The position numbers and the translations under genes were made by a program. Of a stretch of 64,000 nucleotides of DNA, positions 818-58,402 are shown piece after piece. The notes under the pieces are model-generated. The model did no database searches and was not told where the DNA came from. It was given only the letters and a program-made list of their open reading frames with translations. The DNA is taken from the IMG/VR virus record IMGVR_UViG_3300020165_000007, positions 62,001 to 126,000 of that record. One strand, 5' to 3'. The stretch's first letter is position 1, and each line of letters begins with the position of its first letter.

Positions 818-1290
818 TAGATTACTATTTCATTTATATGGAAGATTTTATTTCGAGTATTAATCATATCAATCTCATTTGCGTTATAAATTGGTTCTTC
901 GCTATCTTTTTTAACAAATGAATCGTATTTGTATGGGTTATATGTGATTACGTTATCATTAGTTTCTGCAGGCATTTCTTCACAAGGGAACTGACAATAG
1001 TCAACTAAATCACCAATAACAAATGCGTGTACGTTCTTTCTCATTTCTTGTCTTACTTTGTCTTTTCCCCCCTTTCTTACCCTAAACTCTACATTTCTTA
1101 ATTTAACGTAGTCGGCATACAAAATTACCCTACCCCCATAAGTCACTGAAAATGTATGTTTATGTAAGTTATAATATACCATAACCCTCAAACCAGTTAA
1201 ATCCTCAGGAGTTAATTCTTCCTCCTGTTCAATAATTAAACCCATATGAGTCTTCATTTTATTAATTTCTTTTAATAGATATCTATTCAT
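817..1290 (-). CDS. Conserved phage hypothetical protein (RKNVHAFV / YNPYK family) with N-terminal leader ending LIIEQ
   Basis: 157-aa ORF coupled to both neighbours; motifs VYYNLHKHTFSV, RKNVHAFVIG, YNPYKYDSFV recalled from conserved phage hypotheticals. Confidence 0.75.
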   Translation of the reverse strand: MNRYLLKEINKMKTHMGLIIEQEEELTPEDLTGLRVMVYYNLHKHTFSVTYGGRVILYADYVKLRNVEFRVRKGGKDKVRQEMRKNVHAFVIGDLVDYCQFPCEEMPAETNDNVITYNPYKYDSFVKKDSEEPIYNANEIDMINTRNKIFHINEIVI

Positions 1291-1802
1291 AATCCTCTAA
1301 ATTCATTTTCACTAACAGGTGATGCAGTAATTGACCTATAATAAGGTTTGTAACCACCATAAGTATGTTTATTATCACTCGTGACTCTTCCGTCATTAGA
1401 TACCGAGTAGTATCTAACACGAGATTCAGTCTCATAGTAACCTATATAATCACCATAATTAATATCTATTTCTAACTCATCTAAAGTCGTTTGATATACG
1501 CCAACCTTTAAGTTACCCGGCTCCATTTGTGTCATGTTACTATTACCGTAATTTTGATTTTCAGGTTGTTCTATTTGGACGTACCCCCTAAATTCAACGG
1601 GAGGATGGAACTTTACTCCGTCTTCTACGGTTTCACCGTAAACATCATCAGTTACTGTTTTTTGTTGGTCGATTCTATATAAAACTAACCTAAAATTCAT
1701 ATCACCCTCAAGCCATTCTCGACCCATTGCGATATCTAACTCAAAGTCTTCCGACCCGAAAAACTTTTCTAATCTTGTAATTGGAACCTTTCTATTACTC
1801 AT
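1287..1802 (-). CDS. Neck / head-closure protein (T4 gp14-like)
   Basis: 171 aa; LYRID...DDVYGE...PPVEFRGYV...GDYIGY pattern typical of gp14-like head-closure proteins; preceded by late motif; upstream of gp15-like gene. Confidence 0.55.
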   Translation of the reverse strand: MSNRKVPITRLEKFFGSEDFELDIAMGREWLEGDMNFRLVLYRIDQQKTVTDDVYGETVEDGVKFHPPVEFRGYVQIEQPENQNYGNSNMTQMEPGNLKVGVYQTTLDELEIDINYGDYIGYYETESRVRYYSVSNDGRVTSDNKHTYGGYKPYYRSITASPVSENEFRGL

Positions 1803-3647: not shown

Positions 3648-5207
3648 ATGGGTACTAAAAGGGCATTAAATAAAATAACTGATATAGAAAATCAGATTAT
3701 AAGTGAAGGGATAAAAAGAAAAGTATCACCGAACGTCCCAAAAGAAATTTTAAAAGAAATGAAAAAAATAGGTATCGAAAGATTACCTTACTCTTATTCA
3801 GCCTTAGAACGTTTTATAGATAAAGAAACTATGAACGTACACTACAATAAACATTATAAAGGTTATGTTAATAAACTTAATGATGCGATAAAAGATAAAA
3901 AGGGTAAGGACAAAAAATTAAAAGATATTGTGAAAACAATATCAATGTACGACAGAACTGTAAAAAATAATGCTGGCGGAGCGTTCAACCACGCATTGTT
4001 TTGGAAAATGTTAAGTCCTAAAAGGCAAAGATGTTCAGGAGAAATCTATGAGAAAATTATTAAAGAGTATAAAACGTTTAATAACTTTAAAAAGTTATTT
4101 GAGTCCGCAGCTCAAAAAAGATTTGGTTCAGGGTGGGTATGGCTTGTTTTAACAAAAAATAATAGGTTAAAAATAATGACTACTGCAAATCAAGACAACC
4201 CTCTTATGAATACCATTAAAGACGGTGGACTTCCATTATTAGGTTTGGATTTATGGGAACACTCTTATTATTTAAAATATAGAAATAAAAAAGACGATTA
4301 TATAAAAAACTTTTGGTCAGTAGTGAATTGGGATTTTGTGAACAACTTATATACATCTAACCCTAAATCCTCAATAAAGGAGTCGTTTAATAAAAAAAAT
4401 CTTATTGTTGAAATTGAGAGTCAGGGGTGTAATTCAAGACAAGTTAAACAGACCATAGAATTATTTAACACCAATCCTCAAATAAAGTGGAAATATCGTA
4501 CCGTAATTGATAAGGTTTTTAAAGAAATCTTTAAAGATTATTGGAGAGAAAAAGAAGGAGAGCAGTTATCGGGTATATATGACTTTGAATATAAAGGGAG
4601 TGTTGAAGGAGGTCGGTCGGTATTAAATAAAATCAATACAAACGCAACTACATTTTGTATTTTAAAAAATGACATTAATATTACTTTAAAACATTATGGA
4701 CACCCTCCGATTAGTTTTTACGGAAAAAATAAAAATGAACAAATAAAGGAATTATATCGATTTTTAAAATATATCATCCATTGGAAAGATAGTCTATTTA
4801 AAAATACATCAAACACTTTTGACTCTATGTATACCGCGGTTAATAGAAAAAATAAACAAGGTGATAAAACTGAAAATTTAGCGGTTAAAGAATTACAAAA
4901 AGTGTTCGGAGTTTCTAACGTAAAAAAAGTTGGTGAATTAGGTAGTGTTATAGATGCTATCGGTGGTGTTGATGCGATTATAAGGACAGATAATGGAGAT
5001 AAAACTGTACAAATAAAACCATTTAGAGATTATATTATTGAAGATGGGAAAATAACTATGGTCGGAACAGGTGTTATAAAACAGTATAAAACCGATATGT
5101 TAGTATTTCATAATAAAAATAAAGGAATAGTGGTATTTGATAATAACAACACCCAAATTAAAAACGGGAAATATGTTTTTGATAAAGAGTCTCAATATAA
5201 GTCTTGA
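3648..5207 (+). CDS. sodA: Mn/Fe superoxide dismutase (Mn-type signature) fused to a C-terminal PD-(D/E)xK-like (QxK) domain
   Basis: LPYSYSALE, HYNKHY, NNAGGAFNHALFW, FGSGWVWL, NQDNP, DLWEHSYY retain all four metal ligands; C-terminal part has GDKTE...GGVDAII...TVQIKP. Confidence 0.9.
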   Translation: MGTKRALNKITDIENQIISEGIKRKVSPNVPKEILKEMKKIGIERLPYSYSALERFIDKETMNVHYNKHYKGYVNKLNDAIKDKKGKDKKLKDIVKTISMYDRTVKNNAGGAFNHALFWKMLSPKRQRCSGEIYEKIIKEYKTFNNFKKLFESAAQKRFGSGWVWLVLTKNNRLKIMTTANQDNPLMNTIKDGGLPLLGLDLWEHSYYLKYRNKKDDYIKNFWSVVNWDFVNNLYTSNPKSSIKESFNKKNLIVEIESQGCNSRQVKQTIELFNTNPQIKWKYRTVIDKVFKEIFKDYWREKEGEQLSGIYDFEYKGSVEGGRSVLNKINTNATTFCILKNDINITLKHYGHPPISFYGKNKNEQIKELYRFLKYIIHWKDSLFKNTSNTFDSMYTAVNRKNKQGDKTENLAVKELQKVFGVSNVKKVGELGSVIDAIGGVDAIIRTDNGDKTVQIKPFRDYIIEDGKITMVGTGVIKQYKTDMLVFHNKNKGIVVFDNNNTQIKNGKYVFDKESQYKS

Positions 5208-5224
5208 TAAATAAAGATTTCTAA

Positions 5225-5233
5225 ATATTTATA
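5225..5233 (+). promoter_or_regulatory. Putative late promoter ATATTTATA
   Basis: Motif 13 nt upstream of neck gene ATG 5247. Confidence 0.6.
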
Positions 5234-5246
5234 TATAAAATATATC

Positions 5247-6359
5247 ATGTCAGCAATTAACGAACCACAAAGAAGTAAGCTATATACTCGTATAAAACAT
5301 CTATTAGGTGCTCCCTTACGTGGTGTAGAAATTACCGATGAAATGATGGATTCACTAATGGAATTATCAATTCAAGACTACGCACAATATGTTAACGATT
5401 GGTTAATTGAGGCTCAATGGACATCATTGTACGGGCTAAATTTAGATGAACAGTCGGTAACTAGAGCTTTTATAACTCGTAGTTTAGATTGGGAAACACA
5501 GTATACATACGCTTACTCAAAAATTGTCGGTTTACAGGCTGGAGGTGACTCAGTATTAAAAAAAGATTTTATTACTTTAGTTCCTGGACAACAAATTTAT
5601 GAGGTACCTGCAGGAAGAGAAATTAATGAGTTATTATGGTTTAGTAGGGCAGAGTTAGATGCGGCATTTTTTGACCCATTTATGGGTGGTTTTGGTGGTT
5701 TTGGTGGTGTAGGTTTAGGTGGAGGAGCGGGATTCTCTCAAATGGGTTCTCAGGGAAATTATTTTATAACACCGGCCTTTGATATGTTACTTAGAATGCA
5801 AGATATTAACATTAAGAGAAGAATAATTTCAGGAGATTTAACTTATAGAATTACTGCACTACCTGAAGGTAAAAAGGCGGTTCATCTAATGAATGTACCT
5901 GGAGGTAAATTTGATTTTGGTAATATTCAATATAATCAATACGTTGTGTGGTATTGGTATTATGAAACTGATGACCGTGAGACCTGTTTAGCTGAAAATC
6001 CTGACATAGTAAGATTACCTTCAGATATCCCGATAGATGAAATGTTATGGGATGAGTTAAATAATCCAGCCCAAACATGGGTTAGGAGATGGTTTACTGC
6101 TTATGTAAAAGAATCTTTAGGGAGGGTAAGAGGTAAGTACCTAGGAAATCTAAAAACACCTGACTCCGAAATACAAATGGAGTATGACTCACTTTTAACA
6201 GAATCAAAAGACGAAAAATCAAAACTAATAGAAGAGTTAACTCAAAGGTTAGAAAGATTAAGGCCTGATAAAATGATGGAAAGACAAGCTAATGAAGCGG
6301 AAAATTTAAATAAATCATTACAATATCGGGCATTCCCAAGACAATTTTATTCAATATAA
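5247..6359 (+). CDS. Neck / head-tail adaptor protein (T4 gp13-like)
   Basis: N-terminal LYTRIKHLLGAPLRGVEITDEMMD matches the gp13-family pattern (R.LGAP...VE.T); C-terminal WVRRWFTAYVKESLGRVRGKY and helical tail. Confidence 0.75.
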   Translation: MSAINEPQRSKLYTRIKHLLGAPLRGVEITDEMMDSLMELSIQDYAQYVNDWLIEAQWTSLYGLNLDEQSVTRAFITRSLDWETQYTYAYSKIVGLQAGGDSVLKKDFITLVPGQQIYEVPAGREINELLWFSRAELDAAFFDPFMGGFGGFGGVGLGGGAGFSQMGSQGNYFITPAFDMLLRMQDINIKRRIISGDLTYRITALPEGKKAVHLMNVPGGKFDFGNIQYNQYVVWYWYYETDDRETCLAENPDIVRLPSDIPIDEMLWDELNNPAQTWVRRWFTAYVKESLGRVRGKYLGNLKTPDSEIQMEYDSLLTESKDEKSKLIEELTQRLERLRPDKMMERQANEAENLNKSLQYRAFPRQFYSI

Positions 6360-20000: not shown

Positions 20001-20606
20001 TGATTCACTTATTGTTGCTGAATATCCAGCACCGATAGAGCCATTAAAGTAAAGCCCTGTTAATGTTAAAGTTGGTACGTTATTAGAGGGGGTAATCGTA
20101 GGTGTTACTGAAGGAGTGGTTGTTGGTGTAATTTCATTTGTGGTGCCTACAACAACCAATTCACATCTAATACCTATAGATGATGTTGGTGTAGGTTGTG
20201 GTGTTGGTGAAACTCTAACATTAGGTCGACAACACATATCAGGATTAGCAAAAGAATCTATTACATTAACTATTATTTCATTTTGTATTGGTAATATCTC
20301 AGTACCTCTTTGACCTATAATTTTAAATTCGGTAATATAACTTCCTAATTTTGAGGTTTCTTTTTGTGTAAATTGAGTTTCTAAGTAATAACTTTTAATG
20401 GGTCCTGAGTTTGTCGACCTTTTTACTTTTACAGATACTGGTTTATTAATTATAGTATAAAAACCAGTCTCCTCACTTTTCATGTTAAACGTAATAGTTG
20501 ACGCGGAAAAATCATCATTAGATGACCAAAAAGAGTTTCCGTCATCTATAAAAACCTCAACGATTAGTTTTGGTAGTGTGCTATTTTTTCTAATATAAAA
20601 ATTCAT
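17055..20606 (-). CDS. 1183-aa fibre-like protein: BppU-N-like + Ig-like + long TPS mucin tract + putative zincin-like domain + LamG/ConA-like tip
   Basis: N-terminus [14 protein letters not shown]; ~280-aa TPS(I/V)T(A/S/T/P) tract; [12 protein letters not shown]...AYKEY; C-terminal WIDAGD...FDFDG...LAEFIAY...[10 protein letters not shown]...LPSNHPYK. Confidence 0.75.
18900..19760 (-). repeat. Long 18-nt repeat array with 90-nt higher-order units (mucin-like [12 protein letters not shown])
   Basis: 18991-19080 is identical to 19081-19170; units gatggagttg(c/t/g)(g/a)gt(t/a)a recur throughout. Confidence 0.93.
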
Positions 20607-20608
20607 AA

Positions 20609-22531
20609 TTAACTAATACTCCCTACTACGTTTAATCGACAATCTGAGTCAACACATTCAATACAGTCTTTACACCAAAAATCATATAAATTGAACTTAT
20701 CTTTAAGTATTCTAAAATTATGTTGTATTTCAGGTGCGGTAAGAGGCTCCACATACATTCTAAATTGTGAAATACCTCCCATAAAGGTACCCCCAAAGTC
20801 AGGCTCCATGATAATATCAGTAGTAAGACCTGATAAACTAGTACCTGATAAGGTTTCGTTCGGCATTAATTCAGGGTCTTGAATATATGGACCCGTAAGT
20901 CCTGAACACCCACTAAATATTAAACTCTCTCTTAGTCCTTGCGTTCCTCCACCTATAGATATATTAAAAGGAACCCCTAATTGTTTTTCTTTTTCGGTAT
21001 TAAGTTCGTGAGGAATAATCTCTTCAAAATCAGGAATTTCCATAAACAGATAACCATTGATGTAAATTTTTAATATTCCTAATCTTTTTATTCTATCTTC
21101 AAACCATTTTTGAGTTAAGTTAATGTATGTTCTTTGTTCTTCTTTTGTGGAGCCTGAGTGTGTCTGAGGAGGCATTATTAAATTCGTAGACGACCCATTT
21201 AGTTCAGAGGGGAATAATAATTTTCGGACATCCCCTAATCCCCCCCAATTTAATAAATCACAATCTTCCAAAGTGATATATCTTTCAAATACAGTACTTA
21301 CCATAACCCACGATTCCTCACTTGATGATGTACAAGCAGTATAAATACAATCTTTATAAATTGTATCTGTAGAACAAGTCTCCACTATTGTATATCCTGA
21401 ACTATATGTTACTCCTGTATTTTCACAAGTACCTGTAGTTATACAATCTCCGGTAAACTTAATATATTTTACACAAATTTTAGGATTAGAGGGGTCTCCT
21501 GAAAATCTAACAGAAAACGCATTAGAAAATAAATCTAAGTCGGGGTCAGGTAATTTTTTAGAAACTTCCTTAGTGTACCCACCACAACTACTTATTCCGT
21601 GTGTTTGTGTGACCGCAGTTTGTGGGTAAACTAAAAGACAGTCTGAATTAGTAACTCCAGTATCCGAACACGCACAAGTTTTAATACACTCAGTCAACCC
21701 TGAGGTCACTCTAGTATATCCCGTATCACTTAATGGGCTACCAGATGCGGGATGGTAATATTTATTTTCTGCCCTCGTACCCATGAAAAAGAAAGTACCT
21801 GAATTTCCTGAGTAAACATCATTTAAATATAGAGAATCTGAATCAGGGGTAAATTTGTTTTCTAATCTAGGTTTTAATAATAATTCCGATGACCACCCTT
21901 TATTAACTCTTTCGGGGAAAACTTCATAATCGTAACCAAATAACTTATAAAATCCTTGATAAAATCCTCCATATAGTTCGTTATAATATCCAACATCACT
22001 ATCATTGTAAGAAACTATATTATATAAAGTTCTTTTTGTATTACCCGAAAATCTATGATTAGGCGATTCAGTATATCCTGTAACGGGATGCATCTTAAAC
22101 CTTCTATCGTAATAATGAGGATTAAACTTTTCAAAATCATTTAAACCCATAGTAAATGTCAGAGTTTCACCTGTCATTTTGTCATATAACCCATTGTCTG
22201 TGGCAGTTAAACCAATATCACATAAGGTAGTAGCGGTTTCACAAAACAAATCGTCATTGTTTGGGTTATAGTAGTTTTCAGAAACCAAAGTGTTACCTGA
22301 GTAATATTTTCCCCACTGTAACGTTTCTTTTTGATTAGATAAATTAGAGTTTAAATCAATGTTGATGGGTAATATATTACCGTTGTTTTCCCCTATTAAA
22401 TTAGGTGAAAATACCACTTCAGAGTTATATCCGTCGATATCCGAAGAAAGTGTAATGTCAAAATCGTCAATATTAGACAATTTTGCATCAAATCTATTAA
22501 AATAATAATTTTTAATATTTTGCCCGGGCAT
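20609..22531 (-). CDS. Structural/tail-associated protein with Cys-rich insert and LamG-like C-terminus
   Basis: 640 aa; KIYINGYL...[24 protein letters not shown] is a LamG-type terminal motif; heads the fibre operon. Confidence 0.55.
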
Positions 22532-22545
22532 ACTCCTTTTTTATG

Positions 22546-22572
22546 ATAAATACTTCCTTCGATGTATTTATA
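22546..22572. promoter_or_regulatory. Back-to-back divergent late promoters (GTATTTAT x2)
   Basis: ATAAATAC (22546-22553) and GTATTTATA (22564-22572) form an inverted pair between divergent genes. Confidence 0.65.
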
Positions 22573-22586
22573 GAAAAAAACTAAAT

Positions 22587-23342
22587 ATGAAGTCGTATCT
22601 TTTTAGAACAAAAGAAGAAGCGTTAGACGCATCTAAAGAACTAGGTTGTGAAGGATTTCACAAACACAAAAGAAAAACTTTTATGCCTTGTAAATCTCAT
22701 GACACTTTTAAAAATAAAGTGGAAGGATTAAAAGAACCTAAAGAAGAATTAGATGAGTTAATTGATTTTGACGGAACAATGAATAATTCTAAAATTCCTA
22801 TAATTGACCCAAGAACTAGCGCACCTGGTTTAAGTACAATGGATAAAAGAGTTGCGTCAGGACACCAAACCCAAGACCCACTTATGAGGGGATATAGAGT
22901 TTATTATGGTGAGTCGTTCGTTAGAGAGGAAGATATGTCAAAAGCGTTTGGTCATGAGGATACTGAATCTATGAATGCTGAGGAAACTATAAATCACTTT
23001 ATTAAAGCCTATGAATTTAATCCTGAAGATGCAAAAGATAGAGCAGCGGAAATGGGTAAAGACGAAAAAATACCAGTAAATAAAGAAATTGAAAAGGAAG
23101 AGGGAGAAGACTTTATTGATACTATGAGGTTAATTGAAAAAGAATTCACAAAAGAAGACATTATAAAAATGGTTGAGGATTCATTAGTTTTAAAGTCTGA
23201 CGATAAAGGTTTGAATAAAAAAGATTTATCTGATGACTCCGTGTCACCAATCCTTAAAAGAAATTTAAAAGCCCTAAAAAATATGGCCGAAACTGAAGGT
23301 ATATCAATACCTCAGTTAGTAAAGATGTTAAAAAATGAATAA
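22587..23342 (+). CDS. Hypothetical protein with N-terminal Cys/His module (GCEGFHKH...MPCKSH)
   Basis: 251-aa ORF after a late motif. Confidence 0.7.
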   Translation: MKSYLFRTKEEALDASKELGCEGFHKHKRKTFMPCKSHDTFKNKVEGLKEPKEELDELIDFDGTMNNSKIPIIDPRTSAPGLSTMDKRVASGHQTQDPLMRGYRVYYGESFVREEDMSKAFGHEDTESMNAEETINHFIKAYEFNPEDAKDRAAEMGKDEKIPVNKEIEKEEGEDFIDTMRLIEKEFTKEDIIKMVEDSLVLKSDDKGLNKKDLSDDSVSPILKRNLKALKNMAETEGISIPQLVKMLKNE

Positions 23343-42379: not shown

Positions 42380-42751
42380 ATGGGTAGACCAAAAAAGAAA
42401 GAAATAATTTTAAGTAAAGACTCCGTTTTAGGGTTAATGCAAGAAATTTATAACGAACTTGTCGAGCAAAGAGCAACTGCGGTACGTATACAAAATAAAA
42501 TGTTAAACCTATTAAAAGGTGCAGAAGACATGGCGGTTATAGGTCCTGTTATTAAAGAACAACAAAAAATTATAAACGATACCATAGAAAAAAAATTATC
42601 ATTATCTAAACTACAATCATCAATATGGGAAAAATCAACAAATAATAGTGAGGATAATTTTAACTTAGCGGAAATGGACGACGATGTATTACAGGCGCTA
42701 ATTAATAAAGATACTGACGATAATAATAAAGATGGTTATAAAATGAGTTAA
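42380..42751 (+). CDS. Hypothetical helical protein (weak small-terminase candidate)
   Basis: 123 aa, two long amphipathic helices and an acidic tail. Confidence 0.65.
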   Translation: MGRPKKKEIILSKDSVLGLMQEIYNELVEQRATAVRIQNKMLNLLKGAEDMAVIGPVIKEQQKIINDTIEKKLSLSKLQSSIWEKSTNNSEDNFNLAEMDDDVLQALINKDTDDNNKDGYKMS

Positions 42752-50194: not shown

Positions 50195-51991
50195 TTATCT
50201 TAATTCTTTTAAGTCAAATGTTCTAACACCATCAACTGTAATCTTACCGTAGAAACGGTTGTTCACCATCTTCTTAGCGTATCTAGTCATGATACCCTTA
50301 ATTGGTGTAAAGTTGAATGGGTTATACATTGTAGGTGTTAACTGAAGCGGTACATACGGTGCATATACATATCCAGTATCAAGTAATGATGAACCTTTGT
50401 GTCCCAACAATACTGTGTTTGGTGGGAAGTAAGGGTCACGGTAAACTTGATATCTACCTGACAATGTTCCAACTCTTTCAATACCCATGTTATACTGGTC
50501 CTGGTCAGGAGCCGCGTTTGAAACGTGGAAGTACTCAAGGTCGTCAAAAATAGCAGAAATTTCAGAAGAAACAACAACCCAATTTGCACCACCTCTTAAA
50601 GTTGACTTATGGATTTGAGCTGAAATCTGATTGATTGCTGTAATCAATGTTTGATTCCAATCCTTTTGGTTATAGTTTACAGAACCGTTAGAAATTCTTC
50701 TCCAACCGTTGTAATCCCATCTTAAGCTCCACGCCGCACCTTTTCTTAAGTCTCTTAAGATTTCACGGTCAATCTCAGCTGCAACTTGCTCTGACAACAG
50801 TGCTGTCAATTCAGCTTCAGCATCAATATTATGGAATGCAGATACGTCTTGTGCGAGTTCTGGTGACCATTGTGCTCTTAACTTTCTTTCTGTAACAGAA
50901 ACAGTAACAGCGTCAAGGTCGAATGAAACCTCACCAATCTTATCTTCAAACTCAAGACTTTCATAAACTCTGTGATAAGACTCAAAAGTATCTCCTGATG
51001 CGATAGTAGTTCCGGTATAACCATCGATTGAACAGTTTGGACATCCTACAACAGGTGTTGAGAAGTCTAACTCTAAATAGATTTTACCTGTGACATCACA
51101 GATATCTTCGTATCTTCCACCAGGACCAGGATGAGAACCTGAATAGAAAGTAGTTTTTTGCTCACTACCATACTGTACAATACCTTTACCGTACTTTTGA
51201 GTAACTACTCTAAAGTTATAATACACATCGGGTGCAGCACTTTCATAAGTTTCTAATGAAGCTAAGAAATCTTCAGTATCCATTTCATTTCCATCGGGTC
51301 CGATTAATTTACCAGCTCCTGATGAACTAAATCCTGATAACATAAAGATTAATGACCTAACGTTACCATCTGCCGCTGGGTTACCAGGGCTACCTGCCGC
51401 AGCACCTAAAGCTAATCCCAAAGTAGTACCAACTAATTCACCGTTAGACCATACTGCAGGTACTAAGGTATTAGTTTGAGCACTCCACTGACCTTTTGAA
51501 TAATCAAATAATCCTGCGGGGTCAGAGTTTGGTGTACTTCCTTCATAAAATCTGTCATAAAGGTTAGTTCCTGAATCGTATCCAGCCGATGGGTCTGACT
51601 CGTTATTACCAGGTGCTCCGAATGGTTGTCTGTGTGAACCAGCTCCTTGAGCACCTTCTTGGATTTTTGGTACAAAGTAAAATAACTTACCGATAGGTAA
51701 ATTCATCGCTTGAACAGAAACGATATCGTTAGCCAATAACTTAGAGAATACTCTTCTGATGATTGGAAAAACAACAGTTTCAAATGAACCTGAACTGTCT
51801 GAAGATGATGCTTCGTTTATCAAATGTGACGCTTGGTTTTCATACAATTGCGCCATGTTTTCTTTAATGTGTCCTTTAAGACCGTCGAGGAACCCTAATT
51901 TGTCCCACTTATTGATTGTGTCCTCCTTGATAACTTTTAAGTGCTTAAGACCAATGTTACCAACTAGACCTGATTCTAATAATGCTCCCAT
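50195..51991 (-). CDS. Major capsid protein (T4 gp23-like)
   Basis: IIRRVFSKLLANDIVSVQAMNLPIGKLFY, RKLRAQWSPELAQD..AFHNIDAEAELTALLSEQVAAEIDREI, YAPYVPL, PIKGIMTRY. Confidence 0.96.
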   Translation of the reverse strand: MGALLESGLVGNIGLKHLKVIKEDTINKWDKLGFLDGLKGHIKENMAQLYENQASHLINEASSSDSSGSFETVVFPIIRRVFSKLLANDIVSVQAMNLPIGKLFYFVPKIQEGAQGAGSHRQPFGAPGNNESDPSAGYDSGTNLYDRFYEGSTPNSDPAGLFDYSKGQWSAQTNTLVPAVWSNGELVGTTLGLALGAAAGSPGNPAADGNVRSLIFMLSGFSSSGAGKLIGPDGNEMDTEDFLASLETYESAAPDVYYNFRVVTQKYGKGIVQYGSEQKTTFYSGSHPGPGGRYEDICDVTGKIYLELDFSTPVVGCPNCSIDGYTGTTIASGDTFESYHRVYESLEFEDKIGEVSFDLDAVTVSVTERKLRAQWSPELAQDVSAFHNIDAEAELTALLSEQVAAEIDREILRDLRKGAAWSLRWDYNGWRRISNGSVNYNQKDWNQTLITAINQISAQIHKSTLRGGANWVVVSSEISAIFDDLEYFHVSNAAPDQDQYNMGIERVGTLSGRYQVYRDPYFPPNTVLLGHKGSSLLDTGYVYAPYVPLQLTPTMYNPFNFTPIKGIMTRYAKKMVNNRFYGKITVDGVRTFDLKELR

Positions 51992-53942: not shown

Positions 53943-54665
53943 TTAATAACCTAAATAATCGGATAACTTTTTCATTAAGTCAACACTTTTACCTAAACTA
54001 CCATCTATATTCTGTTCAGTAGCTCTATTCTGTGTCTCCTCTTCAATATTTTCTTCATACTTACCTTTATCGTCTTTATTTAAAAATAAATAAGCTCCGG
54101 GTGTTGAAGGTGACGAGACCAAATCAAAACATATTAATTCAAAATCCTCTTGAACTTCATTTCTTTCTCCTTTCTTTACTAGTGAACCTACTCCACGAGA
54201 AGATACTCCCATAGTAACCCCTTGTCTCATTAAGTTGGCCGCTTGGTCTCCGGGACAAGATACGACACCTCTTTCATGAAATCCTGGTGAGGTTAGTAAT
54301 TTAATCTTACCCATAAGAGTGTTACCTTCCCACCACACATCTGTTATAAGATGAGAAACACGGTCTAAATCAATTAAAGACGATTCAGGGTGATTAAGTT
54401 CAGATATTGATAATCCCTTTTCAATTGCCTTTTTATAATTATCGGCTTCACGTCTTAATATTTTTTCAGGATATACTCTACCATTTCTATTTGGTGTATC
54501 AAATTTCTGTAAAGTCGCATAAAACTCAAAGGGTTTAGAGTGTTCTAGTTGTCCGTAAGATTCTTTAATTACTTTAGAGTTCCTACCATCCTTAGGGTTT
54601 ATTGACCCAGCATCCCACTCAACTAAAATACCTTTACCTGTATCGTTTGGTCCTAATATTTTCAT
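53943..54665 (-). CDS. Prohead maturation protease (T4 gp21-like)
   Basis: NRNGRVYP, SELNHP, GVSSRGVGS, FDLVSSPSTPGA. Confidence 0.93.
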   Translation of the reverse strand: MKILGPNDTGKGILVEWDAGSINPKDGRNSKVIKESYGQLEHSKPFEFYATLQKFDTPNRNGRVYPEKILRREADNYKKAIEKGLSISELNHPESSLIDLDRVSHLITDVWWEGNTLMGKIKLLTSPGFHERGVVSCPGDQAANLMRQGVTMGVSSRGVGSLVKKGERNEVQEDFELICFDLVSSPSTPGAYLFLNKDDKGKYEENIEEETQNRATEQNIDGSLGKSVDLMKKLSDYLGY

Positions 54666-54676
54666 ACTTTTTTTAT

Positions 54677-54685
54677 TATAAATAT
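54677..54685 (-). promoter_or_regulatory. Putative late promoter ATATTTATA
   Basis: 11 nt upstream of protease ATG 54665. Confidence 0.6.
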
Positions 54686-54686
54686 G

Positions 54687-55130
54687 TTAGACCAACTCTT
54701 TTGTCGATTTACTCTTATGTACTTTGAAATAATTTATCCCTTTTATGTTGTCTTTGTATACCGCTCTAAGTATATCTTTTATTTTTTCCCTCAAGATTAA
54801 GGATTTAAAATCTGTAGACTCTTTAACAAATAAGGTTATTTCTAAGTTCATAAAACTTCTTTTACCTTTTTGAATTCCACTACTTCTTAAGTCTAAATCC
54901 ACTATATTAAATTTCTCAAATACTAAAGGGTCACAAATCTCATGTAATGTCTGTTTTATAGTTTTTTCTAAATAACTTGTCGCTCTATCCCAGTTATCAA
55001 ATTCTTTTATGGGTTCTACCCATGTCTGTAATACAATATACAGTGATTTTAAATTTTTTGCATCTACCGTCCCATAATAACATTTTATATCGCTAAATAA
55101 TTTTAGCTGTGATGTTTTTCCTTTTTTCAT
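54687..55130 (-). CDS. Hypothetical protein
   Basis: 147-aa ORF with its own host-type promoter. Confidence 0.7.
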   Translation of the reverse strand: MKKGKTSQLKLFSDIKCYYGTVDAKNLKSLYIVLQTWVEPIKEFDNWDRATSYLEKTIKQTLHEICDPLVFEKFNIVDLDLRSSGIQKGKRSFMNLEITLFVKESTDFKSLILREKIKDILRAVYKDNIKGINYFKVHKSKSTKELV

Positions 55131-55166
55131 ATTTTAGCATAACTTTAAAAGTTTATTTATTTAAAT

Positions 55167-55198
55167 AAAATATAGTTTAATAATGGTAATATGTCAAA
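55167..55198 (-). promoter_or_regulatory. Bacteroidota-type promoter TTTG-N20-TATATTTT
   Basis: Minus strand tttgACATATTACCATTATTAAACtatatttt upstream of ATG 55130. Confidence 0.6.
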
Positions 55199-55203
55199 AA
55201 CAT

Positions 55204-55212
55204 ATATTTATA
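55204..55212 (+). promoter_or_regulatory. Putative late promoter ATATTTATA for bS21
   Basis: 17 nt upstream of rpsU ATG. Confidence 0.6.
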
Positions 55213-55229
55213 TTACATAAAACCGTATA

Positions 55230-55415
55230 ATGTTAATAATAGAGGTAAAAAATAAGAATATTGAATCAGCTTTGAAGAACTATAAATATAAAGTTTATAG
55301 AACTAAGCAGATGCAGAAAATCAATGAAAATAAAGAGTATACGAAACCTTCGGTTGAAAGAAGGGAGGAGCGCAAAAAAGCTATCTACGTAAATAAAAAA
55401 AGAAACGACCTTTAA
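55230..55415 (+). CDS. rpsU: Phage-encoded ribosomal protein bS21 (Bacteroidota type)
   Basis: MLIIEVKNKNIESALKNYKYKV...YTKPSVERREERKKAIY matches the Bacteroidota bS21 pattern MLII.VK..NI..ALK...F.KPSV.RR...KA.Y. Confidence 0.92.
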   Translation: MLIIEVKNKNIESALKNYKYKVYRTKQMQKINENKEYTKPSVERREERKKAIYVNKKRNDL

Positions 55416-55513
55416 CTGTTAGAGTACCACTGGTCGAAAATATCCAAATTCTTTCTTATCTCAGCGTCACTAACAGTAGTATTGGACCATTTAAGATATT
55501 TTCTGTCTGACAT
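55412..55513 (-). CDS. 33-aa micro-ORF coupled to holin-like gene (not in ORF track)
   Basis: MSDRKYLKWSNTTVSDAEIRKNLDIFDQWYSNS*; its ATG overlaps the TAA of the upstream gene (TAATG). Confidence 0.45.
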   Translation of the reverse strand: MSDRKYLKWSNTTVSDAEIRKNLDIFDQWYSNS

Positions 55514-55743
55514 TATTCTTCGACCCCTCTACTCCTTGAAAATTTTTCAAGTGTGGTGAATCCTAGTCCGGCTCCAACAATATACATCATACCATCCCAA
55601 ACATATTTTTGTAGAGGTATTTCCATAAAGATGTTGGATATAAATGCAACACACATCATGAAAAATGCTATTATAGTAACAAATCTTTTTGATGATTTTT
55701 GACCATCGACGTCACCTAATAATGATGTGAAAAATTTTCTCAT
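55513..55743 (-). CDS. Holin-like two-TM membrane protein
   Basis: SSKR followed by two hydrophobic helices (FVTIIAFFMMCVAFISNIF; GMMYIVGAGLGFTT) and a charged C-terminus. Confidence 0.55.
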   Translation of the reverse strand: MRKFFTSLLGDVDGQKSSKRFVTIIAFFMMCVAFISNIFMEIPLQKYVWDGMMYIVGAGLGFTTLEKFSRSRGVEE

Positions 55744-56480
55744 GAAATAAGTCCACTTTCTAATTGTCTTAATTTATATAAAGACGTTAAACTATTTTCC
55801 GACTCATTAATTTTATTAATAGTCTTTTGTAATTTTTCTTTTAATTCGGTATCGGTAGATTCGTTTAGATTATTGTTTAACTTTTCTATTACTGAGTCTT
55901 TTGTGTTGGATATTTCCTCTTTTAATGATTTACCGTCTAAAGAAATAAAATACTTTAACTCATTCTTATCCGACTCATTTAATGTGACATACTCATCATT
56001 AAATGTTTTAGTTGCAACTTTTAACATAGTTGATAGAGGTAGATTAACTGATGTACTTTCTTTAACTACTATTGTTTTTAATAAATTGTTTTTAATCTTT
56101 AATTTAGACTCTAAAAGAGACTCTAAGTTCTTCACAACGTTTTTAGTGTAGATTTGATAATCAATATCGGCATATCTATTATCCACATTTTCTTTTAGTA
56201 ACCCGTCAATCCATTCACCTAAAGAGTTAATTTTAGTTTGATTATTATTAATTAAATCTCTTAATTGTTCAAATGATTCTGATATGTAATCATCAACTAT
56301 ACTTTCATTTAATCCCTTTTGTGACGATAACTCATCGTATATATAATAAGCCTCAGAAATAGATTTATCACCTATAACGTAATGTTTAAATTCTTTTAAA
56401 CCTTTTTTAAAAATATCTTTTTTGTAATTTTTTTCAAAAAAAGTTTCGATTTTAGTTTTTATTACTCCAAATGAATTCAT
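55740..56480 (-). CDS. Helical hypothetical protein rich in [ILV]xES motifs, candidate prohead core component
   Basis: GLNES, LLES, VVKES, TLNES, NLNES, INES, QLES in 246 aa; late motif upstream. Confidence 0.7.
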   Translation of the reverse strand: MNSFGVIKTKIETFFEKNYKKDIFKKGLKEFKHYVIGDKSISEAYYIYDELSSQKGLNESIVDDYISESFEQLRDLINNNQTKINSLGEWIDGLLKENVDNRYADIDYQIYTKNVVKNLESLLESKLKIKNNLLKTIVVKESTSVNLPLSTMLKVATKTFNDEYVTLNESDKNELKYFISLDGKSLKEEISNTKDSVIEKLNNNLNESTDTELKEKLQKTINKINESENSLTSLYKLRQLESGLIS

Positions 56481-56492
56481 GGTATTTTATTT

Positions 56493-56501
56493 TATAAATA
56501 T
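56493..56501 (-). promoter_or_regulatory. Putative late promoter ATATTTATA
   Basis: 12 nt upstream of ATG 56480. Confidence 0.6.
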
Positions 56502-58402
56502 CAATCATTTAGTAATTCGTTCAATTTATCTTCAATTTCACCTAACGACTGTCTTCCTTTAGATAAGTCTAATATAGTTTTTCCATTAATAAAATCATCT
56601 TCTAATAATATATCTAAATCTTTATTACTAATAAATCTTTCAGGTGTTAAATCTCCCCCACCTTCGTCACCACCTGCGTCACCACCTGCGTCACCACCTA
56701 AATCACCACCTAAATCACCACCTAAATCACCACCTAAATCACCTCCTAAATCACCTCCTAAATCACCTCCTAAATCACCAGTCGACATTCCTCCCATATC
56801 ACCTACTTCGGAGTCTGTTGTTTCGTCACCCATAGCATCACCACCTTCACCAGGTTTATTACCGTATAACTTATCTATATTAGCAAATATACCCGTTTTA
56901 CTTATTACTTCAGATGTCTTTTCTAATTCAGCGGCAACTGCTTTTTCCATTCTTTGTTGTTGAATATCCAACTTAATTTCATCATCACTAAATCCGAGAA
57001 TGTGTTTCTTAGCCCAAGATGATGAAACAGGTAGAATACCATTACCTGGGTCACTAACAGCATCCCTATAAAGTTGTATTTTCTGTGTCCATTGTTCCAT
57101 TTTTAATAATTCTGCTTGTGCAGATGGATTAGTTAACCCTAAAGTAAAGTTACCTAATTCGTCTTCAAAACCTAAAAGGTATAAATGAACTATAGCTATT
57201 TTATTAAGTTCTTGAACCATAGATTTTTGTATTCTATTTATAGTTCTAGCGAACCTAATATCTTGTAAAGATAGACTTTTACCGTCTCCAACAACCTCTT
57301 CAAAACCTAAGAAAGCTTTAGGTACCCTCAAAGAAGTTAATAACTTTTTTTGTATGTACTCAATATCCGCAATTTCAGATAGGTTCTGAGCCCCTGGTAA
57401 TGTATCTATAGGGTTAGGAGCATTAGGGTCCCTAACAGGAATAAAGTAATCTTGGTCAACAGCCATTTGATTATATCTTAAGTCCACATTTCCATTGTTG
57501 GAGTCAACTACTTGGTCTCTTTTGAACTTATTAGCGACTCGTTGTACATAAGGTTCAACATCCTTATCATCCATGTTACCTACAAATATTTTAAATACCC
57601 TTCTTTCTGGTGCTCTAGAAGTCCTATAGATTAACATAGCATCTTCTGATAAGATTAATTGTTTCCATATACGTCTACCTTTTTCTAACATAGATGTACC
57701 GTATGGTAGTTTTCTATCATCACCTAATAATCTAAAGTGAGCGACTTCCCAAGTATTGAAAGTTATATCTTTATTCTGCCACAAAAATTTTAATGAATCA
57801 TTTTCACTTTCCGTTGAGTTTCTTTCAGGTTTAATTTTCATACCTCTCTCCTGTCTAGTAATCTCAATATTAGGTAACTGTTGAGCCCCCATAATACCTT
57901 TTTCAGGGTCTAATTTTAAATACACAAAATTATCACCGTACTTACATGTATTACGTGTCCACATAGGTAAGTTAGTATTAATATCTAATCTATTATTAAA
58001 TAAATCCGCTAAAACTGATTTTATTCTTTTACTTTCAGAGTAAATTTGTAATATATATCCGTCTTCATCGGGTGTAGTAGACTCTTCAGAATAAATGTCT
58101 AAAGCTGCTGAAATTTCAGGAGTATACTCCATACTCTCATAGTCGTAAAAAGATGCTAAACGTGTGGGTTCATAATAAACCGCTTGGGTATATAAATTGT
58201 TTTCGATTTTTTGCCATTGCTGACCTAAATATAGTGTTTGTTGAGCTTGTAATTTCTCTCTTTCATATTCTTTTTTGTCGGTAGTTTTTAATATTTGTTT
58301 TTTATCAAAATTATAAACCGGGGCTTGTTGGTCTAAGGTAGAATCAGGTCCAAATACCTTAGTCAACCTTTGCCATATAGTAAAATTGTTATTATCAGCC
58401 AT
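56501..58402 (-). CDS. Portal protein (T4 gp20-like)
   Basis: PEISAALDIYSEE, HFRL...PYGTSMLE, EDAMLIYR.SRAPERRVF.I.VGNM, QDYFIP, IDTLPGAQNL..IADIEY..KKL..SLRVP. Confidence 0.95.
   Translation of the reverse strand: MADNNNFTIWQRLTKVFGPDSTLDQQAPVYNFDKKQILKTTDKKEYEREKLQAQQTLYLGQQWQKIENNLYTQAVYYEPTRLASFYDYESMEYTPEISAALDIYSEESTTPDEDGYILQIYSESKRIKSVLADLFNNRLDINTNLPMWTRNTCKYGDNFVYLKLDPEKGIMGAQQLPNIEITRQERGMKIKPERNSTESENDSLKFLWQNKDITFNTWEVAHFRLLGDDRKLPYGTSMLEKGRRIWKQLILSEDAMLIYRTSRAPERRVFKIFVGNMDDKDVEPYVQRVANKFKRDQVVDSNNGNVDLRYNQMAVDQDYFIPVRDPNAPNPIDTLPGAQNLSEIADIEYIQKKLLTSLRVPKAFLGFEEVVGDGKSLSLQDIRFARTINRIQKSMVQELNKIAIVHLYLLGFEDELGNFTLGLTNPSAQAELLKMEQWTQKIQLYRDAVSDPGNGILPVSSSWAKKHILGFSDDEIKLDIQQQRMEKAVAAELEKTSEVISKTGIFANIDKLYGNKPGEGGDAMGDETTDSEVGDMGGMSTGDLGGDLGGDLGGDLGGDLGGDLGGDLGGDAGGDAGGDEGGGDLTPERFISNKDLDILLEDDFINGKTILDLSKGRQSLGEIEDKLNELLND
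56667..56780 (-). repeat. 12-nt tandem repeats encoding (GGDL)7(GGDA)2 in portal C-terminal tail
   Basis: tcaccacctgcg x2, tcaccacctaaa x4, tcacctcctaaa x3. Confidence 0.92.

What the first reader, a model, noticed from the sequence alone, without database searches (positions are those of the whole stretch)
55167..55415. Phage bS21 on a late motif, retaining the anti-SD-sequestering Tyr but lacking an SD itself
Seen: rpsU on the opposite strand inside the head module, with ATATTTATA upstream, leader ...cataaaaccgtataATG with no SD, and Tyr53 in KAIY. Known: bS21 phages of freshwater Bacteroidota carry the gene beside head genes and express it late; in Flavobacterium the bS21 C-terminal Tyr helps occlude the anti-SD, and host rpsU is autoregulated through its own strong SD. 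Inference: the phage copy escapes that feedback and keeps ribosomes in the SD-independent mode suited to its A-rich leaders (e.g. MCP leader ...aaaaaaaaatattaaaATG).
Basis: partly seen in the sequence, partly recalled or inferred. Interest (0 to 1): 0.6.

Follow-up and report, generated by a model that had tools for sequence, protein, structure and literature searches.

The report
Phage-encoded ribosomal protein bS21 gene
A ~300-kb phage of marine or estuarine Bacteroidota carries its own copy of small ribosomal protein bS21 inside its head-gene block, an arrangement already published for freshwater relatives; the copy shares a conserved upstream motif with head genes and lacks the strong ribosome-binding site that host cells use to self-limit their own bS21.

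Summary
Window 55230-55415 (+) encodes a 61-aa bS21 (Pfam E 6.8e-11). It is the only + strand gene between terminase/portal and protease/capsid genes. Tyr53 aligns with Tyr54 of Flavobacterium johnsoniae bS21. The leader has no Shine-Dalgarno (SD) sequence.

This arrangement, the conserved Tyr and late expression were published by Chen et al. 2022. This is a marine/estuarine member of that phage group, not a new kind.

New here:
- The motif TATATTTATA is a conserved, orientation-specific element. It precedes bS21 in 30 of 36 distinct relatives, prohead protease in 27/27 and the 246-aa gene beside portal in 28/28. It differs from the host-type TTG-N20-TATATTTG promoters found before non-structural genes. 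This supports co-regulation with head genes; the timing itself is inferred.
- No phage bS21 has an extended SD (ΔG +1.3 to -7.4 kcal/mol). Canonical Flavobacteriaceae rpsU has -16.5 to -23.9 in 29/29 cases.
- SD absence is the default for all about 300 phage genes. About 40% of Flavobacteriaceae genomes also carry SD-less bS21 paralogs, so it is not a phage-specific adaptation.

Ribosome incorporation and escape from feedback remain untested.

The parts
55230..55415 (+). bS21 (rpsU-like) coding sequence, 61 aa, stop included
   Evidence: Pfam PF01165 E 6.8e-11. Best solved relatives are bS21 chains, including F. johnsoniae 7JIL_z. dN/dS about 0.10.
55386..55388 (+). Codon of Tyr53, equivalent of F. 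johnsoniae bS21 Tyr54, which stacks on 16S A1534
   Evidence: Alignment. Role of Tyr54 from Jha et al. and McNutt et al.. An aromatic residue is kept in all 37 phage variants: Tyr except one His and one Phe.
55203..55212 (+). TATATTTATA, candidate -10-like promoter element shared with head genes (core TATTTAT 55205-55211)
   Evidence: Upstream enrichment and orientation bias. Conserved 17-21 nt before the bS21 ATG in 30/36 distinct relatives while the leader diverges. Conserved before protease in 27/27 and before the 246-aa gene in 28/28.
55213..55229 (+). Short A-rich leader without a Shine-Dalgarno sequence
   Evidence: Duplex energy +0.5 kcal/mol with the 16S tail. The sequence varies among relatives.
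55131..55229 (.). 99-bp divergent regulatory spacer between bS21 and the 147-aa gene
   Evidence: Start-to-start spacer of about 90-110 nt, with four conserved blocks across clades.
55169..55197 (-). Host-type promoter-like site (TTTTGACA, 16 nt, TATATTTT) pointing at the 147-aa gene
   Evidence: Consensus scan gives 11 of 12. Both boxes are conserved across clades. Function not shown.
54687..55130 (-). 147-aa conserved divergent neighbour of bS21, probably the 'bS21_CN' gene of Chen et al.
   Evidence: Found next to bS21 in 74 of 80 related loci. 36 invariant columns. Model pLDDT 86.5. Literature on bS21_CN. Identity with fam498 was not tested.
53943..54665 (-). Prohead protease, preceded by the same motif at 54677-54685
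   Evidence: phrog_207 E 2e-43. Motif.
55740..56480 (-). 246-aa head-module gene, preceded by the same motif at 56493-56501
   Evidence: No family match.
56501..58402 (-). Portal protein, with TATTTAT 10 nt before its ATG
   Evidence: phrog_213 E 2.7e-66. Motif.
50195..51991 (-). Major head protein (T4 gp23-like) with an A-rich SD-less leader
   Evidence: phrog_138 E 7.2e-65. 38.6% identity to the Flavobacterium phage immuto MCP. Leader.

Best explanation
This is a phage-borne bS21 gene of a roughly 300-kb myophage of Bacteroidota, probably of marine or estuarine Flavobacteriales. It is a monocistronic unit on the strand opposite the head genes. A short -10-like element, TATATTTATA, lies about 18 nt before the ATG and also precedes prohead protease, the 246-aa gene and portal, so bS21 is made together with the head proteins (inferred: late). 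Its mRNA has a short A-rich leader with no SD, like all other genes of this phage, and is read by normal SD-blind Bacteroidia ribosomes. The protein keeps the Bacteroidia-specific Tyr (Tyr53, equivalent to Tyr54) and the neighbouring aliphatic residue. It therefore most likely occupies the bS21 site on host 30S subunits and keeps the anti-SD tail sequestered (inferred). Host canonical rpsU is translated preferentially by bS21-free ribosomes through an extended SD. The phage copy is not under that feedback. By filling vacant sites it should also hold host rpsU translation down, so phage bS21 would progressively take over the site while ribosomes stay competent for SD-less phage mRNAs. Shown: gene identity, context, motif conservation, absence of an SD, Tyr conservation, purifying selection. 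Inferred: timing, ribosome incorporation, effect on the feedback.
For: - Identity and Tyr alignment.
- Head-module context on the opposite strand: and 23 of 25 related loci, as in Chen et al..
- Motif statistics: 71 of 300 upstream regions, against 13 in shuffles and 27 for the reverse complement, with a distance peak at 13-19 nt.
- Footprinting: bS21 30/36, protease 27/27, 246-aa gene 28/28, 147-aa gene 0/31, 76-aa gene 0/18.
- A second, host-type promoter class (TTG-N20-TATATTTG) precedes a ClpC-like ATPase, a peptidase, a polynucleotide kinase and small ORFs, but no structural gene.
- SD energies: bS21 +0.5. All 300 phage genes average -2.0, the same as shuffled sequence (-2.1). A is enriched at -3 and at -11 to -14.
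- 39 distinct phage protein/leader variants range from +1.3 to -7.4, against -16.5 to -23.9 in 29/29 canonical Flavobacteriaceae rpsU genes.
- Y54A or C-terminal deletion of F. johnsoniae bS21 raises translation of the SD-bearing rpsU reporter 3- to 5-fold (McNutt et al.).
- Chen et al. saw bS21 transcribed with structural genes.
- Near-identical sequence covering bS21 is present in marine metatranscriptome assemblies.
- dN/dS is 0.10.
Against: - There is no direct evidence that this protein enters ribosomes.
- The RNA runs are assembled contigs, which show neither strand, 5' end nor timing and may contain DNA. Two further RNA runs cover head genes but not bS21.
- The motif is also found before many genes outside recognisable structural modules. 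PHROG annotation of motif-bearing genes was poor, so 'late-specific' is not established.
- In distant clades a TTG lies 20 nt upstream of the bS21 motif, which also fits a host-type -33/-7 promoter.
- Absence of an SD is the default state here, so it carries little evidence of selection for escape.
- The N-terminal helix is strongly diverged from cellular bS21 (long branch). The protein may therefore do more than replace host bS21, or something different.
Confidence: 0.55

Rival explanations
1. Specialised ribosomes. The point of the phage copy is not occupancy or escape from feedback. Its diverged N-terminal helix, which lies where mRNA approaches the platform, would bias ribosomes towards phage late mRNAs over host mRNAs. 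This is the hypothesis of Chen et al. and is compatible with the main explanation.
For: The phage bS21 sequences form one clade on a long branch (100/99; SH-aLRT 98 with 37 variants). Chen et al. map the significant phage-versus-bacterium differences to the N-terminal helix, while the C-terminal anchor and Tyr are kept. In the alignment the phage has Tyr, Val and Gln where F. johnsoniae has Arg21, Phe23 and Thr28.
Against: No feature distinguishing phage leaders from host leaders was found. The phage translation initiation regions (TIRs) show the ordinary Bacteroidia pattern. There are no binding or translation data.
Confidence: 0.25
2. Non-ribosomal or virion role. A small, very basic protein (pI 10) encoded in the head module serves as an internal head or nucleic-acid-binding protein. 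Alternatively it is packaged and delivered to act at the onset of the next infection.
For: It lies in the head-morphogenesis block and is co-regulated with prohead protease. Chen et al. raise packaging as a possibility. There is a weak, non-significant NCBIfam hit to a nucleoid-associated family, E 0.19.
Against: The ribosome-specific features (KPS motif, Tyr plus an aliphatic residue) are conserved in all phage clades under strong purifying selection. Another phage bS21 is known to enter E. coli ribosomes (cited).
Confidence: 0.08
3. The motif is not a late promoter. It could be a general phage promoter used throughout infection, a variant of the host -7 box read by the host sigma factor, or an AU-rich translational enhancer in the mRNA. 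In that case the 'late motif' part of the finding is wrong, although the gene is still bS21.
For: The motif precedes 68-89 genes spread over the whole genome. It resembles the host -7 box TAnnTTTG with A in place of G. In distant clades a TTG lies at host-type spacing upstream of it. Its distance to the ATG is tightly constrained, and a second peak lies only 3-5 nt from the ATG. The only sigma factor found is a full sigma-70 type with region 4, not a gp55-like -10-only factor.
Against: bS21 is an isolated gene on its strand and needs its own promoter, and the motif is the only + strand block conserved in all clades. Many copies directly follow terminator-like G-rich stems with T runs. Genes behind full host-type promoters are all non-structural. 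Chen et al. observed late co-expression.
Confidence: 0.2

Closest known systems
bS21-encoding jumbo myophages of freshwater Bacteroidota (Chen et al. 2022, ISME Commun 2:31; PMC9723584)
   Same: bS21 on the reverse strand within TerL-portal-protease-MCP. Genome near 300 kb (270 kb at 88% completeness), 33% GC, 12 tRNAs. Tyr at the Tyr54 position. A conserved co-neighbour gene. Bacteroidota host signals.
   Different: The runs holding this lineage are labelled marine, estuary and marsh rather than freshwater lakes. Whether this record is one of the IMG/VR genomes they used was not determined. Promoter motif and SD status were not analysed in that paper.
Canonical rpsU of Flavobacteriales, autoregulated through an extended SD (Jha et al. 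2021; McNutt et al. 2023)
   Same: Same protein family. Same Bacteroidia-specific Tyr and moderately basic C-terminal part: pI 10.2, against 9.4-10.3 in cellular copies.
   Different: No SD: +0.5 against -16.5 to -23.9 kcal/mol. It lies outside the canonical SD-bearing clade in the tree. It is driven by a phage motif, not a host context.
   Same: Tyr-retaining bS21 copies without an SD, coexisting with one SD-bearing copy. Functionally the closest cellular analogue of the phage gene.
   Different: They are chromosomal and fall in several clades. The phage clade joins one of them only weakly, SH-aLRT 71, so common descent is not shown.
T4-type late promoters (TATAAATA, read by gp55)
   Same: A short AT-only -10-like element with no conserved -35, repeated before many structural genes of a phage whose capsid protein is T4 gp23-like.
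   Different: The sequence is TATTTATA on the coding strand, which is the reverse complement of the T4 box. No gp55-like factor was identified. The phage sigma factor found has regions 1.2, 2 and 4.

Membership tests
Ribosomal protein bS21 (Pfam PF01165 / TIGR00030) | Profile match over the curated threshold across the whole domain | tested here: met
   Pfam 42.1 bits against a cut-off of 27, residues 4-55 on profile positions 2-54 of 55. The stricter NCBIfam equivalog scores 25.7 against 28.95, just under its cut-off.
Ribosomal protein bS21 (Pfam PF01165 / TIGR00030) | Stoichiometric component of the 30S subunit | not testable with these tools
   Needs ribosome purification and mass spectrometry from infected cells.
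Bacteroidia-type bS21 (ASD-sequestering) | Signature Tyr at F. johnsoniae position 54, followed by an aliphatic residue (Ile55) | tested here: met
   Tyr53-Val54 align with Tyr54-Ile55 of 7JIL chain z. Definition taken.
Bacteroidia-type bS21 (ASD-sequestering) | C-terminal part less basic than in other phyla | tested here: inconclusive
   C-terminal pI 10.16, net charge +4, within the range of Flavobacteriaceae copies (9.4-10.3). No comparison with other phyla was run here.
bS21 phages of Chen et al. 2022 | bS21 on the reverse strand inside the TerL/portal/protease/MCP block, with a conserved co-neighbour gene | tested here: met
   Equivalence of the 147-aa gene with their fam498 is inferred, not tested.
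bS21 phages of Chen et al. 2022 | Genome 293-331 kb, GC 31-34%, 5-25 tRNAs | tested here: met
   270,383 bp at 88% estimated completeness, 33% GC, 12 tRNAs.
bS21 phages of Chen et al. 2022 | Freshwater lake habitat | tested here: not met
   The runs holding the stretch are labelled marine, estuary, marsh and marine sediment. Habitat is a descriptive trait of the published set, not a defining trait of the lineage.
SD-autoregulated rpsU of Flavobacteriales | Extended SD complementary to the 16S 3' tail upstream of the start codon | tested here: not met
   ΔG +0.5 kcal/mol here. Phage relatives range from +1.3 to -7.4. Canonical copies range from -16.5 to -23.9 in 29 of 29 cases.
T4-type late transcription | TATAAATA box and a gp55-like sigma factor lacking region 4 | tested here: not met
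   The motif differs in sequence and orientation. The only sigma-70-family gene has region 4. gp55 itself was not searched by sequence.

The most novel reading that the evidence does not exclude
bS21 and its invariably divergent 147-aa neighbour form a two-gene ribosome-takeover module. The 147-aa protein has a predicted fold most like type III secretion chaperones and YbjN proteins. It would chaperone or load the phage bS21 onto host 30S subunits. The Tyr-retaining, SD-less phage bS21 would then turn the host's own feedback against it: by filling bS21-free sites it would shut off translation of the SD-dependent host rpsU, so the phage protein replaces the host protein without any need to destroy it.
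Probability: 0.12. Interest if true: 0.7.

Novelty: new member of a known kind. Interest (0 to 1): 0.4.

Why it matters
Bacteroidia ribosomes are kept blind to SD sequences partly by bS21, and the cell measures bS21 occupancy through the one gene that has a strong SD. A phage bS21 that keeps the blinding residue but is made outside that loop is a natural probe of the circuit. It predicts that phage bS21 represses host rpsU translation, which can be tested with the existing F. johnsoniae reporters. The conserved TATATTTATA element gives these uncultured jumbo phages a candidate late-promoter consensus. The SD-less cellular paralogs suggest that ribosome heterogeneity at the bS21 site is common in marine Flavobacteriaceae. 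The core facts about the gene itself are already in the literature.

Tried and rejected
- Complex prediction of the 147-aa protein with bS21 returned no verdict (score 0.00). This is neither support nor evidence against binding.
- Foldseek of the 147-aa model against the PDB gave nothing at E < 0.01. The wider structural search put type III chaperones on top at Z 6-7.4, under the Z 8 caution line. The Atlas feature search gave no lead.
- PHROG and Pfam left most motif-bearing genes and the 147-, 76-, 246- and 514-aa neighbours unnamed. The 'late genes only' test therefore could not be made quantitative.
- The annotation of Flavobacterium phage immuto was fetched to transfer gene names. Its replication genes are not T4-like and the step was dropped.
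- 'Relatives' cannot be drawn for a virus record.
- The word-based protein search found only close phage relatives. The large HMMER search was not used.
- Trees of 60-residue proteins could not place the phage clade. My first idea, that it derives from the SD-less Tenacibaculum paralog (best identity 59%), is not supported.
- The RNA runs were available only as contigs, so they show no strand, 5' end or level. A 701-nt contig ending 14 nt after the bS21 stop is suggestive only.
- The terminator scan found no convincing terminator after bS21.
- A 33-codon ORF overlapping the bS21 stop occurs in only 9 of 80 loci and was dismissed.

Full report
**What is there.** The window is bases 62001-126000 of a 270,383-bp IMG/VR virus record (33% GC, estimated 88% complete, 12 tRNAs).
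- Window 55230-55415 on the + strand is an ATG-initiated 61-codon ORF. Its start is fixed by an in-frame TAA twelve bases upstream.
- It matches Pfam Ribosomal_S21 over the whole domain (E 6.8e-11, 42 bits, cut-off 27). It falls just under the stricter NCBIfam equivalog cut-off.
- Its best solved relatives are bS21 chains, including chain z of the Flavobacterium johnsoniae ribosome 7JIL. In that alignment Tyr53-Val54 of the phage protein pair with Tyr54-Ile55.
- Every neighbouring gene is on the other strand: large terminase, portal, a 246-aa and a 76-aa gene on one side; a 147-aa gene, prohead protease, a 514-aa gene and a T4 gp23-like major head protein on the other.
- ATATTTATA lies at 55204-55212.

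**It is already known.** Chen et al. 2022 (PMC9723584) described 47 freshwater phage genomes of 293-331 kb and 31-34% GC.
- In those genomes bS21 lies on the reverse strand within exactly this terminase-portal-protease-capsid block.
- An aromatic residue (Tyr in 54 of 61) is kept at the Tyr54 position.
- bS21 is transcribed together with structural genes.
- A co-evolving neighbour gene sits on the opposite strand.
- The present record fits that group in size, GC, tRNA count and gene order.
- The public runs that hold near-identical sequence are labelled marine, estuary, marsh and marine sediment. This is a saline-water member of the group.
- Host signals are all Bacteroidota. Every cellular bS21 relative retrieved is from that phylum. 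The capsid's nearest cultured relative is a Flavobacterium phage (38.6% identity). One promoter class matches the Bacteroidota consensus. Translation-initiation regions have A enriched at -3 and at -11 to -14 and no SD.

**The 'late motif'.**
- TATTTAT occurs in the 40 nt upstream of 71 of about 300 crudely called genes. Composition-matched shuffles give a mean of 13 (maximum 24), and the reverse complement occurs in 27.
- Its distance to the ATG peaks at 13-19 nt, with a second peak at 3-5 nt.
- Many copies directly follow G-rich stems with T runs, as expected at the start of transcription units.
- A second, distinct class, TTG-N20-TATATTTG, matches the host -33/-7 consensus. It precedes a ClpC-like ATPase, an M42-like peptidase, a polynucleotide kinase, a methyltransferase-like protein and small ORFs, and no recognisable structural gene.
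- The strongest evidence is footprinting across 80 related loci whose bS21 is 51-100% identical. The motif is present 17-21 nt before the bS21 ATG in 30 of 36 distinct upstream regions. It precedes prohead protease in 27 of 27 and the 246-aa gene in 28 of 28, while the flanking sequence diverges. It is absent before the 147-aa gene (0/31) and the 76-aa gene (0/18).
- bS21 therefore shares a conserved cis element with head-morphogenesis genes.
- That the element is a promoter, and that it fires late, is an inference consistent with Chen et al.'s transcript data.
- I could not map 5' ends. The RNA runs exist only as assembled contigs, which show that sequence covering bS21 is present in two marine metatranscriptomes but give neither strand nor timing.
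- The phage encodes a sigma-70-family factor with regions 1.2, 2 and 4, downstream of host-type promoters. It is a candidate reader of the motif, but this is untested.
- In distant clades a TTG lies 20 nt upstream of the bS21 motif, at host-type spacing. The window's clade has lost that spacing through a 12-nt deletion.

**The Shine-Dalgarno argument.**
- I scored the 25 nt before each start against the 16S tail GAUCACCUCCUUUCU.
- The 39 distinct phage bS21 protein/leader variants range from +1.3 to -7.4 kcal/mol.
- In 29 of 29 canonical Flavobacteriaceae rpsU genes the value is -16.5 to -23.9. This agrees with McNutt et al. 2023, who showed that this extended SD lets bS21-free ribosomes drive rpsU translation, and that Y54A or C-terminal truncation of bS21 raises it 3- to 5-fold.
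- First qualification: the phage's 300 genes as a whole are no more SD-like than shuffled sequence (mean -2.0 against -2.1). An SD-less bS21 is the default state, not evidence of adaptation.
- Second qualification: cells have the same thing. Of 61 evenly drawn Flavobacteriaceae genomes, 25 carry two or three bS21 genes. In all 24 that I parsed, exactly one copy has the extended SD and the others have none, and all keep the aromatic residue.
- McNutt et al. list extra bS21 copies in other phyla but not in Bacteroidota.
- In a tree of 119 sequences the canonical SD-bearing copies form one clade (SH-aLRT 96). The phage copies form another on a long branch (98), which joins one SD-less paralog clade only weakly (71). 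The phage gene is thus not a recent capture of canonical rpsU, and its origin is unresolved.

**Mechanism.**
- The best-supported reading is that the phage makes its own Bacteroidia-type bS21 together with head proteins.
- The mRNA is read by ordinary SD-blind ribosomes. The protein occupies the bS21 site and keeps the anti-SD tail sequestered.
- Its synthesis does not depend on the pool of bS21-free ribosomes. By filling vacant sites it would also repress host rpsU translation.
- Purifying selection (median dN/dS 0.10) and retention of the ribosome-specific residues argue for a ribosomal role.
- The strongly diverged N-terminal helix leaves room for Chen et al.'s idea of selective translation of phage mRNAs.
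- None of the functional steps is shown.

**The conserved partner.**
- The 147-aa gene is the divergent neighbour of bS21 in 74 of 80 loci, with a start-to-start spacer of about 100 nt containing four conserved blocks. Three of the six misses lack the upstream DNA.
- It is probably the 'bS21_CN' gene of Chen et al.
- Its model is confident (pLDDT 86.5). The top structural matches are type III secretion chaperones and YbjN proteins at Z 6-7.4, which is suggestive but under the caution line.
- A complex prediction with bS21 gave no verdict.

**Verdict.** This is a correct observation of a published phenomenon in a new, saline-water member of the group. It is less special than implied, and it is experimentally open.

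Noticed in passing
Loci L066-L076 and L199-L249 (cellular Flavobacteriaceae genomes G001-G064): About 40% of sampled Flavobacteriaceae genomes (25 of 61) carry 2-3 bS21 genes. In all 24 parsed, exactly one copy has the extended SD (-17.5 to -23.9 kcal/mol) and the others have none. All keep the aromatic residue at the Tyr54 position. The bS21 autoregulation paper I read does not list this for Bacteroidota.
   Followed up: partly
Genome 128523-130544 and 130609-131679 (L080:2523-4544 and 4609-5679), outside the window: A ClpC/ClpB-like double AAA+ ATPase (673 aa) followed by an M42-like peptidase, each behind a full host-type TTG-N20-TATATTTG promoter. McNutt et al. speculated that bS21 phages might encode a protease acting on host bS21.
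   Followed up: partly
Genome 246459-247274, - strand (L250:1081-1896): A phage sigma-70-family factor of 271 aa with regions 1.2, 2 and 4 (phrog_351 E 2e-55). It lies downstream of genes headed by host-type promoters and is a candidate reader of the TATTTAT motif.
   Followed up: partly
For example window 1287-1802 (-) and 42380-42751 (+), plus about 25 other genes genome-wide: The TATTTAT distance distribution has a second peak only 3-5 nt before the ATG. If the motif is a -10-like box, these genes would give leaderless or nearly leaderless mRNAs.
   Followed up: no
window 54687-55130 (-): The 147-aa conserved partner of bS21 has a confident beta-alpha-beta-beta-alpha-beta model. Its best structural matches are type III secretion chaperones (InvB Z 7.4, Spa15 6.9) and YbjN-family proteins. 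It has no Pfam or PHROG family.
   Followed up: partly
window 55131-55229 and related loci L089-L168: An AATAAAC block about 20 nt before the 147-aa gene's ATG is conserved across clades. ATAAAC(A) is 4- to 11-fold enriched upstream of genes genome-wide. It may be a third regulatory motif.
   Followed up: no
window 20532-22650: The divergent genes 20609-22531 (-) and 22587-23342 (+) each have the motif, arranged as a near-palindrome (TATAAATAC ... GTATTTATA). This is a back-to-back promoter pair.
   Followed up: no
window 55429-55436: Metatranscriptome contigs from two runs of one marine study break here, 14-21 nt after the bS21 stop, where the convergent transcripts should meet. Contigs cannot prove transcript ends.
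   Followed up: no
Genome 163842-176421, outside the window: A cluster of 12 tRNA genes, including Ile-tat, Leu-taa, Leu-tag, Arg-tct and Lys-ttt, which suits the AT-rich codon usage.
   Followed up: no
Loci L122, L123, L152: A lineage of viral contigs whose bS21 lacks both the upstream TATTTAT motif and the 147-aa neighbour. It shows that the two features travel together.
   Followed up: no
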